Shown here piece by piece: positions 2,313-53,714 of a stretch of DNA of 64,000 bases (position 1 is its first letter; each line of letters opens with the position of its first letter). The DNA is from Dimorphilus gyrociliatus (taxonomy: Eukaryota; Animalia; Annelida), in NCBI GenBank assembly GCA_904063045.1, contig CAJFCJ010000003.1:2280504-2344503 (forward strand), read 5' to 3'. The notes under the pieces were generated by a model. The model worked only from the letters and a program-made list of their open reading frames with translations. It was not told where the DNA came from and searched no databases. The translations under genes were made by a program, and so were the position numbers.

Positions 2313-4471
2313 ATGCCAAATTTTATCTTACACGAAGCAGCTAAAGACGGTTATTTAGAACTGTTAAATAGCGCTACAAGACGAGAAGCGAACCAAAAGG
2401 ATGAAGATGGTATGACGCCCCTTATGTGGGCCTCATCAAAAGGGAATGTAGAAGCACTAAGAGTTCTTACATCACGTGGGTGAGTTAAACAATAAAAAGA
2501 CAAAAAGAAAAAAAGTGATTGTAAGTTTTACATTAAAGTTTTAACTAAACTAAAGATATACTGACTTTATTGCTTTATCAAAAGTAATATAGTTAAAATA
2601 TTCAACAATTTTAAGTAAAGTAAAGTTAATTGCTTAAAATGAGTAATAAAATATTAGTAATATTATAATATTGTTTTTAAAAAAGGGAAATTCTTTCAGG
2701 TAAGACGGCTTTGTTCAACCGTAATAAAGCACGTGCCTTATCAAAATTTTTCAAGCTTATCTATCTACAGGTTTAAAATTGCTTAAACTTAGGAAAAGAG
2801 TTTGAAAATCCCTTAGCTTTTATATTCTTTTCTTATCAACTTTCCCTAAAATACAATTATACTGTATAAGTGGACAGTCACAGAGATTAGTATAGATATT
2901 TCATATCAAAAGATGTGTTGAGAGAAGCGTTTCTTTCGTGGAAGTTTTTACTTAAAGCTATTTTGAATTTAATATACCATATATAAACATTGCTGTTATT
3001 GATCTATTAATAATTTATTCATTCATACGATCGCATTATCTCTATTTGTTCTCACTATACAGTTTGATTTTCTTTTTAAAAAAAAACAGTTACAAACATC
3101 AGTTATATTATATAATATAGGTGAGAAATAATAAAAAATTCATTTAAATTAAATTAATAATTAGTTCTAATTATACATGTATATTATTCACATATAATAT
3201 TATAATTAATTTTAATATAAAACGCATTATATGTACAAATAATCATAAAATAACGATAATTTTTAGTTTTGTTTGTTATTTATTTGGTTTGCTTTTTATA
3301 CTGTATATACAGTATATATATACTGTTTTCTATTTTGCAGAGCTAACGTAGATAAAGCAGATAACTCTGGATGGACTGCACTACATCATTCGGTTGCTAA
3401 TGGCCATGAGAAATGCGTAGAATATTTAGTCAATATTGGAGCTAATTTCTGGAATTTAGATAATGATTTAAGAACACCAATGCAATTAGCAGCTGTTTTT
3501 GATCGAATTGAAATTGTTCGATATCTGGATATGATTGTTGCTCAACAATCAGCACTTCATAAAAATTCTGTAAGAAGCTTAAAAGAAGTCGCTGAGAAGA
3601 AAGCTAAGAAAAGATTGAAAAGACGTGAAAAAGTTCTCGAAAAGTTAGAAAAGAATCAAAAAGACCAGGTTAAGGTCAGTATATATTTATGTCGTGACAG
3701 TGTTACTATAATTTTTGATGGAGTAAAACCATTTAATAAGGAACCTTTATTGTTTTATTATCTGACTATATCACGACTTTAAGAGATACTTTCTAAAAAT
3801 AGAATAAGAACAATAACTCAAAGGTTATTGACGAAGGAATTTTAAAGGATGACTTATCCGAAAGTTTTTCACAACATGTGGGTCTCTCCAATAAAGGTAC
3901 TGTTATTTCGAGGATTTTTGCCGGAAAGAGTAAAAGTAAACAGCCTCTAAATGGGACAACTAGAGAAAAGGTTACTCTCAAAAAGACTAAAACGGAATTA
4001 CAAGCCGATGGAGCAAACAGTGCTTGTAGTGCGCCGGCGGAACTTGGGTCCAACGAGCAAACTTCAAGTCTATTCGAAAGGCCTGGTTTGGGCTCTATGA
4101 TTATCATAAATAAAATAAAAGCGTCACTTGACGGAGTAAACGATGGAAGGGACGACGCAGATAGTATAGGTACAGCAAGGTCACTAGCAGTTCGACTTAA
4201 CAACTTTCAAGCGGACGTAGATGATCAAGACCAGGACGAAGAAGAAGAGTGTTCTGCTTTAGAACTCTTTCTGGAAGTGAACAATTTACATGAGATTCTT
4301 CCAAAATTAACTCAAGAGCGCATAGAGGCTAAGACCTTAATATCACTTGAGGAAAAAGATATAGATGAAATGGGATTTCCTCTAGGCATAAAAAAAAAAT
4401 TACTGGCTGCCATAAAAGAAAGAAAGGAGTGTTTTAAAAATTCGGCTATTTTAATAGACAATCAACTGTAA
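2313..4471 (+). CDS. USH1G: Ankyrin-repeat + SAM scaffold, SANS/USH1G (ANKS4B) family; exons 2313-2479, 3341-3674, 3803-4471 (~389 aa)
   Basis: Exon 1 read by eye ([41 protein letters not shown]) joins in phase through GT-AG to ankyrin ORF 3273. The central [12 protein letters not shown] matches the SANS CEN motif, and a C-terminal SAM domain follows ([27 protein letters not shown]). Confidence 0.9.
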
Positions 4472-49761: not shown

Positions 49762-50380
49762 AATGTCATAAAACAGCGATATTACATGCCAATCACAATC
49801 TTTTACAACATAACAGAGATTTAGGCCTACTCCTTGTTACTTGTAATATATCATCATTAAATATATCGAAATTGAATAAAAGTCTAGAAACACTAAAGAA
49901 GTAATCTTGGATTGTAAAAACAAAATTCTTTTATATAAATGAAAATCTAAAAAGAATAAGTAGAGTAGAGTAAGCATGTTTTTCTTTCCATTCCATTCCT
50001 ACATCTATAAATAGAATGTTCTATTTTGTATTGCAACTGATAAATAATTCTGATTTCTCTCTCAAAATATTAGAATGCAAATTTATTGAACTTCATAGCT
50101 TTTTTTTGCTTTTTCAATGTTAATTGTCATTATTTGTATGTCAGACTTGCAGTATGCGAGATAGATTAGAAAGCACATTGAAAACTACTGAAGAAACAAA
50201 AAGAAAAGAACCACTCTAAAGCTACATGCTAAAAACGGAAGATGACTTTTTAAAAAAAAAGAATTTTATCATTATTAGATAGATAGATAAATAGATAGAG
50301 AGACGAAAAAAGGAGAAAAGAATTTTGGTTGTTTTTTTTTGTCGTTGTTTTCGTTATTTTCATTCTTAAAATATTCTTGT

Positions 50381-53196
50381 TTAAAAGCCAGCCAATTCGG
50401 TAAAGGTTTGATCCAAATTTTCGCTGATTGCCTTGTATTTCTCCTTCTCGGCGAGAAGTTCATCCTCCAATCGGTCGATCTCCTTCTGCAATTTCGAAAC
50501 GGCTCTCTCAGCCTCGGTGGCACGGTGTTCTGCCTCCTTCAGACGCGACGTCAGATCCCTGATCGATTCCTCGTAGCTTTCCTCTCTTTGCGATGCCTCC
50601 TGTTCGCTAATTTCCAAGGATTTCATGTTGTTGCCTACAACCTTCAATTCTTCCTCCAATTCAATTATTTTTCCTTCAGCAGCCTCCAAGCGGGCTTCTG
50701 CTCTTTCAAGATCCACTTCTGTAATGGCCAACTTTCTAGCTGCCTGTTTTATTGGAGAAAAGAAAAAAGGATGTGAAAATGAAATCTTATATAGGATCCT
50801 ACTTTCTCATCAGTACTCTATATCTTTTAAATAAAAAAGCAGATGTGATGAAGAAACTATTAAAAAAGAAACAAGTTCACACCTCTTCGTATTTGTGGTC
50901 TGTTTCTTCACCAAAACGGATCGTGTCTTCTAATTCCTTCTCGAGTTGTTGGATCCTTTCATCGTTATTCAAATTACGATCTTCAAGAACTTTACGTCCT
51001 CTGTATTATTGTCGATCTTCGAGTTAGTTAAAAGGCGGCATTATGTGTGAAGAGCACCGAGTCCAAGACCACGTACGAAATACGAAGAGGGGAACTATAT
51101 GGGGAAAATATAGGGGAAGGGAAGGGAAAAAGGAAAGAGGGTTGGATCTTTCATTCACCTCATCATATTTGCGATCGGCGTCTTCGGCTATGAACTTGGC
51201 CTCTTTCAGCTGCGTTTCGAGCGTATCAATTCTTTCGTCATCAGCCAAAGATCGGCTTTCCAATAACTTTCTTTCTCTAAAAACCACGAACTCTTTGATA
51301 AGAAAGAGAAAGAGCAAAAATAAAAGAAAAAAAGTCTCGGACTCGAACTCTTCGGCCAAAAAAAATAACAATAAACGAAAGCAAGAAACCGAATAAATGA
51401 ACTTTCACACATTCATTCATACAGGTAATCGTGGGAAGAAGACACCTATGGAGAAGACTCATTCAACCTTTCACTCTCGTCAGAGGCTTTCGATGCCTCC
51501 TCGAGTTTCGTATTCGTCTGCAGCAGTTTAGTCTCGTTATTCTCGTGATCTTCTTCTAGCTGTCTAAGGCGCTTCGTCAACGACTGAACCTCCGTCTCAG
51601 TCTGAAAAGAAAAGCCGAATTGAACGAGGTCGTTCAGAAATCTCACCTTTCAGTATCTTCGGCTGTTTTAGATGCTTTGTCAAGCGTCTCTGTTGCCGAA
51701 TCTAACCGCGAAGCAGTCTGCTCGAAATCCTCTTCTAAGAGCTTAATTCGACGAGTCAAAGCACCTACTTCTGCTTCGGCCTGTTTACGCGTTCATAAAA
51801 ACGGATTAAATACAAAAATTGACGCTTTAAGAAAAATTAGCGTCTAGAAAAACTTTTAGCATTAAAGAGATTATTTGTTAAGAGAAAGTGAGCACCCTTT
51901 TTAAACAGTAGCTTATATTTTTCAATTCCGAGCCAATTATGGTAAACTTTAGAGATGACGTTGATTTGAGAAGATAGGCAACGCTAAATAAGCCTTTATA
52001 TTTGGAGTGTAACTTTTCTAATTCTTCTCTAACGTCAAGATCTTCTCCAACGTCTTCGCAATCGGAAAAGAGGGAATAATCGTTGAGTATATAAGAACTT
52101 GAGTCAATATTTGTTGGAAGACAACTGCCTTCAGGTTCTGGACGTCTTTCTGTAGAGGTAACTGATTGGCTGAGAGAAGAGGGCGTGCCGGATAATGAAT
52201 TTTTCATTGTTGGTCTCTTAGAAGTTTTTGTGGTCTTTATGCGGCATCTGCATTCGTTACCTTCCGGAATCGATTCAATTGAAGCACCTCTCCTATATTT
52301 GGCATGAATAGGACAATCTTTCCGTGAAACAAGGATCTTTTTCCTTTTTTTTGTTGATGAGGCATCGCCCTCCCTGTCGATCTGCTTTTCATCAGATTTC
52401 TGTTTTCTTATCTGCTCACAAGAGCTTCTCAGATGAACGACATTTTCAAAATCGCATCCAGGACAAACGGAATGCGTTGAAGAAAGGGTGGACGGTAAGC
52501 AGGAAGACAGTTCAGTCGCCATTCGTTGGAAGAAAGTGCGTAATTATAACCGAATACAGGCCCGTAGTATGGCTGCCAAACTATTCGCCTATTCTATATT
52601 TAGATCGAGGCGAGCAGTATCGGATGTTAGGTTTTTATAGGCGTATGTACGTATAAAAATATATACTATATATAAATACACGTTTGCTTTCCAGATACCC
52701 ATGCAGACAGGCTAACTTTTGCAGTAGAAAGCGTATTTTTTTTACACTGCATGCCTGTTTTTTACCTCTCATTTTTTTACTTCCATTTGTTTTTAACTTT
52801 TCTTTCATTTTTCCTCTATAATTAACTAAGAAAAGTGAAAAGTTTCGTTATACTTACGTTGTTATGTTTTTTCTCGGTTTCTTCCAATTTTTGGGTGGCC
52901 TCTTCCAATTGAGTCTGAGATTGATCTAACTCACCCTCCAGTTGATTTATTCTTTTCTGTAGATCGTTGATTTCTTCTTCTTGCTGTTTAATGCAATAAG
53001 TATAGGGTATTAGGAAACAATATATATCTTTGCACAGTTTAACTTGGCTCTTTATGAAACTAACCTTGGCGTTCTTGTCTTGTTGATCCTTCAGATTTTG
53101 CTCGAATTGATCGGCTTTGTCCAATGCAGACTCCTTTTCCAGCTTCATCGACTGCATCTTCTTTTTGATAGCGTCCATAGTATTGGTAGCAGCCAT
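50381..53196 (-). CDS. TPM: Tropomyosin; exons 53196-53065, 52983-52858, 3A 51780-51647 or 3B 51601-51468, 4A 51276-51159 or 4B 51000-50883, 50743-50381
   Basis: [16 protein letters not shown] start, continuous heptads, canonical 284 aa from MDAIKKK, and all splice phases consistent. Confidence 0.97.
51896..52522 (-). CDS. Alternative internal first exon of tropomyosin (209 aa, low-complexity, Tm1-I/C-like) splicing to exon 3
   Basis: Same-strand ORF in intron 2 with an upstream in-frame stop and a phase-0 GT donor (AGG|GTGCTC) at 51895. The junction reads [18 protein letters not shown]|[12 protein letters not shown]. Confidence 0.8.
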
Positions 53197-53714
53197 CTTG
53201 GTTGATTTCTATCTACTTTCTTCCACTTCCACCGAGAAAAAGTTATGAAGAATCGAAAATTTCGATTTTTATTTGAAGGACCAACGAAGAATGCCGAATA
53301 GCCAGGATAGGACAGCCAACGATAGGTGGAGCTAGTATCGGTAAAATTATTTAGCTGGAATGTGCGTTATTTCTCTCTTACGGCTATACGCCTCTTCTAT
53401 AGGGGGTTGGGGTGGAAGATTCGTTTATAGACGGATTGGCTTAAAAATACGAATTCAGGGAGGCCTACCTATTTCACTTATTATTATGCACCTAGCATAC
53501 ATAGACAGGTTTTTAAATAAGGATCTAACGCTGTTTGAACTCAGTCATTTTATCTTTTTCCTACTATACTGGGTAATTGCGATTATTAGAAAGATTTGTG
53601 AAGCACACGATACTAGTCACATTAGTATCTTTGTTAAACTACAGTATACTATGATGCTTAGAGCTGTCATTAAACTTTTCAGAAAAACTGCTGATTCGCA
53701 TGTGTTTCATGTTA

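What the first reader, a model, noticed from the sequence alone, without database searches (positions are those of the whole stretch)
51049..51353. Long-range intronic RNA duplex that brackets tropomyosin exon 4A
Seen (mRNA sense): GAAGAG-UU-CGAGUCCGAGAC (51353-51334, upstream intron) is complementary to GUCUUGGACUCG-GUG-CUCUUC (51069-51049, downstream intron). This gives 12 bp (one G-U) plus 6 bp, GC-rich within pyrimidine-rich introns. Pairing would loop out exon 4A with both splice sites while leaving the 4B acceptor free. Known: competing intronic pairings drive mutually exclusive splicing in Dscam1, 14-3-3 and Mhc. Inference: an undescribed structural switch for 4A/4B choice.
Basis: partly seen in the sequence, partly recalled or inferred. 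Interest (0 to 1): 0.7.

Follow-up and report, generated by a model that had tools for sequence, protein, structure and literature searches.

The report
RNA duplex looping out tropomyosin exon
Two short GC-rich stretches in the introns on either side of one of two alternative tropomyosin exons of a tiny marine worm can pair into a strong RNA helix, which probably helps the cell skip that exon and use its twin; the kind of mechanism is known, but not from this gene or animal group, and it is not yet proven here.

Summary
The complementarity is real. In mRNA sense (minus strand), 51353-51334 pairs with 51069-51049 as a 20-bp helix with 3 G-U pairs and one bulge (-30.7 kcal/mol; -34.3 with flanks). 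No dinucleotide shuffle of the two introns reaches it (0/1000, 0/300; z about -7). It is the strongest of 1,272 equally spaced segment pairs in the window. Each arm is the other's best partner in the pre-mRNA, and arm 1 is unique in the genome.

The gene is the one canonical tropomyosin of the annelid Dimorphilus gyrociliatus. RNA contigs from four studies show only 3A-4A-5 and 3B-4B-5.

New here: a neighbouring element (51090-51078) is perfectly complementary to the 4B donor. Its pairing crosses the first helix, so the two folds exclude each other.

Limits: close relatives are withheld, so covariation of these arms was untestable. Global folding does not favour the helix (ddG 2.4-9.8). Other annelid-like contigs carry conserved docking/selector-like pairs at the same exon cluster, but with unrelated sequence.

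Verdict: probably (about 0.5) a new member of RNA-structure-controlled mutually exclusive splicing. Function is unproven.

The parts
51334..51353 (-). Arm 1 of the long-range helix. It lies in the intron between exons 3B and 4A, 114 nt after the 3B donor and 57 nt before the 4A acceptor.
   Evidence: unique in the genome; its best partner in the pre-mRNA is arm 2
51049..51069 (-). Arm 2 of the long-range helix. It lies in the intron between exons 4A and 4B, 48 nt before the 4B acceptor and 18 nt before the branch-site-like TAACTAAC.
   Evidence: I3
51159..51276 (-). Exon 4A (118 nt), enclosed with both splice sites in the 264-nt loop of the helix.
   Evidence: RNA joints 51276>51647 and 50743>51159 in four runs; translation
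50883..51000 (-). Exon 4B (118 nt), the alternative to 4A.
   Evidence: RNA joints 51000>51468 and 50743>50883 in four runs; translation
51072..51096 (-). Element E (core 51090-51078), 8 nt upstream of arm 2. It is complementary to the 4B 5' splice-site region and, more weakly, to the 4A one.
   Evidence: the repeat finder I2: 13/13 complementary. Extended duplex -24.9 kcal/mol; best partner of E in the gene (z -4.8); 0/300 shuffled introns reach it
50873..50898 (-). The 3' end of exon 4B plus its donor (GUGUGA), partner of element E. This pairing crosses the arm 1:arm 2 helix.
51023..51030 (-). Branch-site-like TAACTAAC for the 4B acceptor, left single-stranded by the helix. Little pyrimidine tract follows it.
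   Evidence: read from the sequence; the branch-site assignment is inference
51468..51601 (-). Exon 3B (134 nt). Its donor GUUGAA matches the consensus only at GU. In RNA contigs it is joined only to 4B.
   Evidence: joints 51000>51468 and 51601>52858; sequence
51647..51780 (-). Exon 3A (134 nt), with donor GUGAGA. In RNA contigs it is joined only to 4A. It is separated from 3B by a 45-nt intron (51646-51602).
   Evidence: joints 51276>51647 and 51780>52858
50384..50743 (-). Last coding exon (exon 5) with the stop codon, common to both isoforms.
   Evidence: Pfam PF00261 in its homologues

Best explanation
The two arms form an intronic RNA helix in the tropomyosin pre-mRNA of Dimorphilus gyrociliatus. 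The helix loops out exon 4A. It shortens the effective distance between the weak 3B donor and the 4B branch site/acceptor from 467 nt to about 160 nt, and so favours the 3B-4B-5 isoform. When the strong 3A donor is spliced to the nearest acceptor (4A), arm 1 is removed with that intron. Arm 2 then has no partner, and the adjacent element E can pair with the 4B donor, hide it, and let 4A splice to exon 5. The two pairings cross each other, so only one can exist as a nested fold. Shown: the complementarities, their statistical excess, the exon structure, and the exclusive 3A-4A / 3B-4B joints. Inferred: that the helices form in vivo, that they cause the choice, and the order of events.
For: Helix strength and excess over chance. 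The arms are mutually best partners and arm 1 is unique in the genome. G-U pairs make the sense strand 7 kcal/mol better than the antisense. RNA contigs of four runs from four studies give only the joints 3A-4A, 3B-4B, 4A-5, 4B-5, 2-3A and 2-3B, so 4A is skipped exactly in transcripts that use the 3B donor, and the helix sits inside that intron. The flanking introns (191, 158 and 139 nt) are 2-3 times the genome's median of 66 nt (PMC7854359). The second complementarity, E with the 4B donor, is 13/13 (-24.9 kcal/mol; 0/300 shuffles) and is topologically exclusive with the first helix. Analogy in other annelid-like tropomyosin genes with 4A and 4B orthologues: in contigs L011, L018, L028 and L093, perfectly conserved intron blocks (7% of intron bases) are each other's best partners over 4-5 kb. 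A block after exon 3 pairs with blocks about 200-290 nt upstream of the 4A and 4B acceptors (z -3.7 to -5.1). L052 has its own -38 kcal/mol pair bracketing the 4A orthologue (0/100 and 0/60 shuffles).
Against: No sequence of these introns from a relative could be obtained, so there is neither conservation nor covariation for these arms. In the MFE of 467-, 719- and 1037-nt contexts the helix is absent. Arm 1 is predicted to pair with the 5' part of exon 4A and arm 2 with exon sequence. Forcing the helix costs 2.4-9.8 kcal/mol, and its pair probability ranges from 0 to 0.39. A constitutive helix does not by itself explain why 3A never joins 4B. Paralvinella shows no significant pair around its 4A orthologue. 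In the other contigs a generic flank-complementarity test is weak (z 0.2 to -2.0 except L052), and 4B-flanking controls also give two strong hits. The conserved blocks of the other annelid-like contigs have no detectable sequence homology to the Dimorphilus arms. Contigs drop rare isoforms, so 3A-4B or 3B-4A transcripts may exist at a low level.
Confidence: 0.5

Rival explanations
1. The complementarity is a neutral accident with no effect on splicing. Tropomyosin exons and nearby sequence are rich in GAAGAG/CGAG-type words. Arm 1 resembles such coding words (for example exon 3A 51735-51716), so a complementary intron stretch could find a partner by chance.
For: Arm 2 also pairs at -22 kcal/mol with GAAGAG-rich exon 3A sequence. 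The helix is not in the MFE. No conservation data exist. The generic test in other annelids is inconclusive.
Against: 0/1300 shuffles reach the energy, and it is the top of 1,272 real-sequence comparisons in the window. Its position exactly brackets a mutually exclusive exon. A second, independent significant complementarity lies in the same 158-nt intron. Introns in this genome are under strong size reduction, yet these keep GC-rich islands.
Confidence: 0.3
2. The two GC-rich islands are functional as single-stranded binding sites for splicing regulators (intronic enhancers or silencers), and their mutual complementarity is incidental. 4A/4B and 3A/3B are coordinated by tissue-specific proteins.
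For: Both isoforms appear at similar contig depth in whole-animal RNA, as expected for tissue-specific isoforms. The other annelid-like contigs have conserved UGCAUG (Rbfox-type) motifs right after the 4A donor, which shows that protein-based control exists in this exon cluster.
Against: Dimorphilus has no UGCAUG in the exon-4 introns. A 20-bp register-perfect complement is not needed for protein sites. G-U wobbles rather than mismatches occur at the three non-Watson-Crick positions.
Confidence: 0.12
3. The inverted repeat acts in another double-stranded-RNA process: it promotes back-splicing of exon 4A into a 118-nt circular RNA, or it is an ADAR or Dicer substrate.
For: Intronic inverted repeats that flank an exon are the usual driver of exon circularisation (established knowledge). 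The geometry fits.
Against: read laying reports joints that go back as well as skips, and no backward joint at 51159/51276 was listed in four runs. No A>G differences were listed in the arms. However, contigs drop rare forms, and intron coverage existed only in X2.
Confidence: 0.05

Closest known systems
Looping-out of an exon by base pairing between its flanking introns (reviewed in PMC9198270)
   Same: The complementary arms lie in the upstream and downstream introns. The enclosed exon with both splice sites is skipped. The outer donor and acceptor are brought together.
   Different: Here the enclosed exon is one of a mutually exclusive pair, and its skipping is tied to the choice at the neighbouring exon-3 pair. 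No experimental test exists.
Competing RNA pairings in two-exon mutually exclusive clusters, e.g. mammalian ATE1 exons 7a/7b (PMC7797038) and the duplication model of Ivanov and Pervouchine (PMC6071210)
   Same: It is a two-exon cluster of homologous, equal-length exons, with intronic elements whose alternative pairings place one exon in a loop. There are traces of duplicated intron sequence: the word AAGAGTTCG occurs at 51352-51344 and 51295-51287, with a degenerate copy before the 4B acceptor.
   Different: No second strong partner competes for the same arm. The competition proposed here is between two crossing helices (arm 1:arm 2 versus E:4B donor), not between two selectors for one docking site.
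Docking site / selector sequences of arthropod Dscam1 exon 6, 14-3-3 and Mhc (PMC6071210, PMC4691838)
   Same: This is long-range intronic pairing that decides which variant exon is used. The unidentified annelid-like contigs L011, L018, L028 and L093 do show this layout: one conserved block after exon 3, with best partners upstream of 4A and of 4B.
   Different: In Dimorphilus only one pairing is seen. The animal is a lophotrochozoan and the gene is tropomyosin; no paper in the searched library links tropomyosin with docking/selector elements.
Hairpin controlling chicken beta-tropomyosin exon 6B (Libri et al. 1992, as cited in PMC9198270)
   Same: It is the same gene family, with a mutually exclusive exon pair and RNA structure that lowers the use of one exon. 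Element E masking the 4B donor is the closer analogue.
   Different: The exon pairs are different (vertebrate 6A/6B are residues about 165-188; here residues about 125-164, from my own knowledge of tropomyosin exon maps). In the chicken case the structure involves the exon and its own flanks, whereas arm 1:arm 2 is purely intronic and spans the exon.
Steric hindrance between a donor and a nearby branch site (alpha-tropomyosin exons 2/3; general mechanism in PMC6071210)
   Same: It may apply to exons 3A/3B, which are only 45 nt apart.
   Different: It cannot explain 4A/4B: that intron is 158 nt and the 4B branch-site-like motif is about 130 nt from the 4A donor. Introns of this species have a median of 66 nt, so even 45 nt may be spliceable.

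Membership tests
Exon looping-out by flanking intronic complementarity | Stable complementary arms, one in each flanking intron, beyond chance | tested here: met
   -34.3 kcal/mol; 0/1000 and 0/300 shuffles reach it; top of 1,272 window comparisons
Exon looping-out by flanking intronic complementarity | The enclosed exon is skipped in a substantial share of transcripts | tested here: met
   The 3B-4B joint (51000>51468) skips 4A in all four runs, at contig depth similar to the 3A-4A form
Exon looping-out by flanking intronic complementarity | Pairing is maintained in evolution (conservation or compensatory change) | not testable with these tools
   Near relatives are withheld. Reads of relatives covered exons only. 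Distant annelid-like contigs share no homologous arm sequence.
Exon looping-out by flanking intronic complementarity | Disrupting the pairing changes splicing and restoring it rescues | not testable with these tools
   Needs a minigene or genome editing
Exon looping-out by flanking intronic complementarity | The helix is part of the favoured fold of the pre-mRNA | tested here: not met
   Absent from the MFE; ddG 2.4-9.8 kcal/mol; pair probability 0-0.39 depending on context. Predictions for long, protein-covered nascent RNA are unreliable.
Docking site / selector competing pairings (Dscam1, 14-3-3, Mhc type) | One docking site is complementary to a selector next to each variant exon | tested here: not met
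   Each arm has a single strong partner and the next is at least 12 kcal/mol weaker; only a 6-bp match to GCTCTTTC (51315-51308) lies before 4A. The feature is met in contigs L011, L018, L028 and L093.
Docking site / selector competing pairings (Dscam1, 14-3-3, Mhc type) | The alternative pairings are mutually exclusive | tested here: inconclusive
   Arm 1:arm 2 and E:4B donor cross (order arm 1, E, arm 2, 4B donor), so they cannot both be nested. A pseudoknot is not physically excluded.
Steric-hindrance mutually exclusive exons | The intron between the two exons is too short, or the branch site too near the donor, for splicing | tested here: not met
   The 4A-4B intron is 158 nt. For 3A/3B the intron is 45 nt, which is undecided because the genome's median is 66 nt.
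Reading-frame/NMD-enforced exclusivity | Including both or neither exon shifts the frame | tested here: met
   The exons are 118 nt (3n+1) and exons 3A/3B are 134 nt (3n+2). This removes double or null products but cannot enforce 3A-4A / 3B-4B coupling, since 3B-4A and 3A-4B would be in frame.
Circular-RNA-promoting inverted repeats | A back-splice junction of the enclosed exon is present in RNA | tested here: inconclusive
   No backward joint is listed in four runs, but these are contigs, which drop rare forms
Known structured RNA families (Rfam) | A match to a curated covariance model | tested here: not met
   No match at E up to 1 in 50300-53400

The most novel reading that the evidence does not exclude
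The helix is one half of a co-transcriptional two-state RNA switch that couples two adjacent mutually exclusive exon pairs. Splicing of the strong 3A donor to 4A deletes arm 1, which frees element E to mask the 4B donor. Use of the weak 3B donor leaves time for arm 1:arm 2 to form, which loops out 4A and forbids the crossing E:4B-donor helix. It would be the compacted descendant of a docking/selector system that operates in the exon-4 cluster of annelid tropomyosin genes. That would be the first such system outside arthropods and vertebrates, and the first RNA-structural explanation of coordinated choice between exon clusters.
Probability: 0.2. Interest if true: 0.75.

Novelty: new member of a known kind. 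Interest (0 to 1): 0.55.

Why it matters
Tropomyosin is the classic model of mutually exclusive splicing, yet structure-based control is known there only for one vertebrate hairpin. Docking/selector systems are documented mainly in arthropods and in a few vertebrate genes.

If the helix works as proposed, it extends RNA-structure-driven exon choice to annelids. It also offers a very small test system: all elements lie within about 900 nt. That system bears on an open question, namely how choices at two neighbouring exon clusters are kept in step (3A with 4A, 3B with 4B), when both mixed combinations would be in frame.

The conserved complementary blocks in the other annelid-like contigs suggest that the principle is older than this species.

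Tried and rejected
1. RNAduplex on whole introns chains distant loops and is useless as a local statistic. I replaced it with a local alignment plus windowed duplex energies.

All three were repeated correctly.

3. Repeat or transposon origin is rejected: arm 1 is unique in the genome.

4. There is no paralogous tropomyosin gene for an intragenomic comparison. The second hit is only 42% identical over part of exon 5.

5. No Rfam family matches.

6. Relatives:
- Word searches with exon 5, P0001 and P0144 found no protein above 90% identity except the species' own model P0230.
- Look-ups for Lineus and Aplysia isoforms failed because only the longest product of a gene is indexed.

7. Paralvinella: there is no significant pair around its 4A orthologue. 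The shared 7-mer GGACTCG in the corresponding intron is at chance level, and that GC-rich stretch has many equally good partners.

8. Homology between the Dimorphilus arms and blocks A1, C2, c3 and D5 of the other contigs is undetectable by blastn-short or nhmmer. A by-eye alignment of arm 2 with D5 (about 53% identity, shared GGTC and CACAC ends) is too weak to claim compensatory change.

9. The pair found in L018 (119 nt before the 4A acceptor) is not conserved in its sister L011.

10. A generic test asking whether the flanks of 4A are more complementary than the flanks of other variants is inconclusive.

11. Donor-masking elements like E recur only in L052.

Full report
**What is there**

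The window carries, on the minus strand, a tropomyosin gene. RNA joints from four public runs, each from a different study, fix its exons:
- exon 1 (about 53295-53065)
- exon 2 (52983-52858)
- exon 3A (51780-51647)
- exon 3B (51601-51468)
- exon 4A (51276-51159)
- exon 4B (51000-50883)
- a last exon (50743-50384)

The database protein DgyrCDS2459 of Dimorphilus gyrociliatus (P0230) matches every exon at essentially 100%. The genome is 77.9 Mb, close to the published 73.8 Mb (PMC7854359). The window is therefore from this miniature annelid or something near-identical. A whole-genome search with exon 5 finds one full match and only one weak partial one.

**The observation**

RNAduplex pairs them over 20 bp: 6 bp, then two U-G wobbles beside a bulged U, then 12 bp with one G-U. 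The energy is -30.7 kcal/mol, or -34.3 with a few flanking bases.

Evidence that this exceeds chance:
- Dinucleotide shuffles of the two introns never reach it. The first test gave 0/1000 (mean -14.0, min -28.0). A more exhaustive scan gave 0/300 (mean -15.2, sd 2.8).
- Real sequence is a better null. Among 1,272 segment pairs of the same sizes and spacing on both strands of the window, this is the strongest.
- The sense strand beats the antisense by 7 kcal/mol because of the wobble pairs.
- Each arm's next-best partner anywhere in the pre-mRNA is at least 12 kcal/mol weaker.
- Arm 1 is unique in the genome, so this is not a repeat family.
- No Rfam family matches.

**Splicing context**

The contigs of all four runs contain only these joints: 2-3A, 2-3B, 3A-4A, 3B-4B, 4A-5 and 4B-5. 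Two points follow.

First, 4A and 4B are mutually exclusive. Each is 118 nt, so including both or neither would shift the frame.

Second, the choice is coupled to the neighbouring pair. 3A goes with 4A and 3B with 4B, although 3A-4B and 3B-4A would be in frame. The intron between 3B and 4A is therefore never seen removed on its own. The helix lies completely inside the 467-nt intron that runs from the 3B donor to the 4B acceptor. It would loop out 4A and bring that donor and acceptor to about 160 nt apart.

Other features of the splice sites (read from the sequence):
- The 3B donor (GUUGAA) matches the consensus only at GU, whereas 3A has GUGAGA.
- The 4B acceptor has a perfect branch-site-like TAACTAAC (51030-51023), 18 nt after arm 2, but almost no pyrimidine tract.
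- 3A and 3B are 45 nt apart. Steric exclusion is possible there but not certain, since the median intron of this species is 66 nt.
- The introns around 4A and 4B (191, 158 and 139 nt) are 2-3 times that median.

Contigs cannot exclude rare mixed isoforms.

**A second element**

The repeat finder on the region shows a 13/13 complement. One side is 51090-51078, just 8 nt upstream of arm 2. The other side is the last 12 nt of exon 4B plus the first base of its donor (50894-50882).
- When extended, the duplex is -24.9 kcal/mol.
- It is the best partner of this element (E) in the whole gene (z -4.8).
- It is reached by 0 of 300 shuffled introns.
- E also pairs, more weakly (-18.8), with the homologous 4A donor region.

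Along the RNA the order is arm 1, E, arm 2, 4B donor. The two helices therefore cross, and as ordinary nested structures they exclude each other.

This suggests a two-state model:
- State 1: arm 1:arm 2 forms, 4A is looped out and the 4B donor is free.
- State 2: arm 1 is absent or unpaired (it is removed when 3A is spliced to 4A), E masks the 4B donor, and 4A joins exon 5.

This model is inference.

**Against the helix**

Thermodynamic folding of 467-2600-nt contexts never puts the helix in the MFE. Its pair probability is 0 to 0.39, and forcing it costs 2.4-9.8 kcal/mol. Arm 1 is predicted instead to pair with the purine-rich 5' part of exon 4A, and arm 2 with exon sequence. The 467-nt intron as a whole folds better than shuffles (z -2.6). 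Such predictions are weak for nascent, protein-covered RNA, but they do not help the claim.

**Comparative evidence**

Near relatives are withheld from the look-ups. The relatives' RNA covered exons only. Covariation of the arms themselves therefore could not be tested.

Paralvinella palmiformis (L004) has four exon-4 variants, with the 4A and 4B orthologues last and in the same order. It shows no significant flanking pair.

A degenerate pattern for the end of a 4A-type exon plus GT found 102 metagenome contigs. Many are cDNA-like or carry only a 4A-type exon. Five (L011, L018, L028, L093, L052) have the Paralvinella-like layout with both orthologues.

L011/L018 and L028/L093 are two lineages whose introns are about 50-65% identical. 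Only 7% of their intron bases lie in perfectly conserved blocks of 14 nt or more. Among these blocks:
- A1 (after exon 3) has as its two best partners, over 4-5 kb, block c3 (208-242 nt before the 4A acceptor) and block D5 (171-292 nt before the 4B acceptor). This holds in all four contigs (z -3.7 to -5.1). c3 and the 3' half of D5 are near-copies of each other.
- a2 pairs best with c1 before 4A (z -4.4 to -4.9).
- C2 pairs with the 5' half of D5.

This is a docking/selector-like layout, conserved in sequence but without covariation, because the blocks are invariant.

L052 has its own -38 kcal/mol pair bracketing the 4A orthologue (0/100 shuffles; 0/60). It also has an element in the 4A-4B intron that is the best partner of both donors, as E is in Dimorphilus.

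These blocks have no detectable homology to the Dimorphilus arms. A generic flank test is inconclusive. The comparison therefore supports the principle, not this helix.

**Literature**

Looping-out, docking/selector systems (Dscam1, 14-3-3, Mhc, srp), the competing structures of ATE1, and the chicken beta-tropomyosin exon 6B hairpin are all established. No paper in the searched library links tropomyosin with docking/selector elements, and none treats splicing of this gene in Dimorphilus.

**Verdict**

It remains unproven and is incomplete as stated. It is a single helix rather than a competing set, and the interesting extras are the 3/4 coupling and the crossing element E. I class it as a new member of a known kind.

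Noticed in passing
window 51780-50883 (minus strand): The choice at two adjacent mutually exclusive pairs is coupled. RNA contigs of four runs join 3A only to 4A and 3B only to 4B, although the mixed forms would be in frame.
   Followed up: partly
window 51096-51072 and 50898-50873: Element E, next to arm 2, is 13/13 complementary to the end of exon 4B plus its donor (-24.9 kcal/mol; 0/300 shuffles). It pairs more weakly with the 4A donor. The pairing crosses the arm 1:arm 2 helix.
   Followed up: partly
window 51646-51602 and 51467-51462: The intron between 3A and 3B is only 45 nt. The 3B donor GUUGAA is very poor, whereas 3A has GUGAGA.
   Followed up: no
window 51352-51344, 51295-51287, about 51018-51010: The word AAGAGTTCG occurs in arm 1 and again 11 nt before the 4A acceptor, with a degenerate copy (GAAGATCGA) before the 4B acceptor. 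GCTCTTTC (51315-51308) resembles the 3' part of arm 2. These may be traces of intron duplication together with the exon.
   Followed up: no
window 52874-51751 (minus strand): RNA contigs cover this stretch without a break, from the end of exon 2 into exon 3A. The stretch includes the ORF 52543-51881. The public model DgyrCDS2459 (P0230, 462 aa) splices part of that ORF between exon 2 and exon 3A. It could be an alternative first exon, a retained intron or a chimeric model.
   Followed up: partly
L011, L018, L028, L093 (coordinates on the gene strand, as): These are unidentified annelid-like contigs with four exon-4 variants. Invariant intron blocks after exon 3 (A1, a2) are the best partners of invariant blocks upstream of the 4A orthologue (c3, c1) and the 4B orthologue (D5). 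This is a docking/selector-like network not described in the searched literature.
   Followed up: partly
L011, L018, L028, L093, L052: first 20 nt after the 4A-orthologue donor: UGCAUG (Rbfox-type motif) is conserved directly downstream of the 4A orthologue and in other conserved blocks. In Dimorphilus the only UGCAUG in the gene is at 52705-52700.
   Followed up: partly
L011 about 3432-3447 and its orthologues: The conserved block A1 starts with AGCAG|GTAGTG, which looks like juxtaposed 3' and 5' splice sites (recursive-splice-site-like or a decoy donor).
   Followed up: no
many loci, e.g. L010, L041, L042, L045, L061: Contigs named Ga0056..., Ga0126... and Ga0209... carry a 4A-type exon (85-89% identical in protein) but no detectable 4B orthologue before exon 5. 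By their names I take them for host DNA in worm-associated metagenomes; this was not checked.
   Followed up: no
window 51267-51248 and 50983-50964: The 5' parts of exons 4A and 4B are 75% complementary to each other over 20 nt (repeat finder I1).
   Followed up: no
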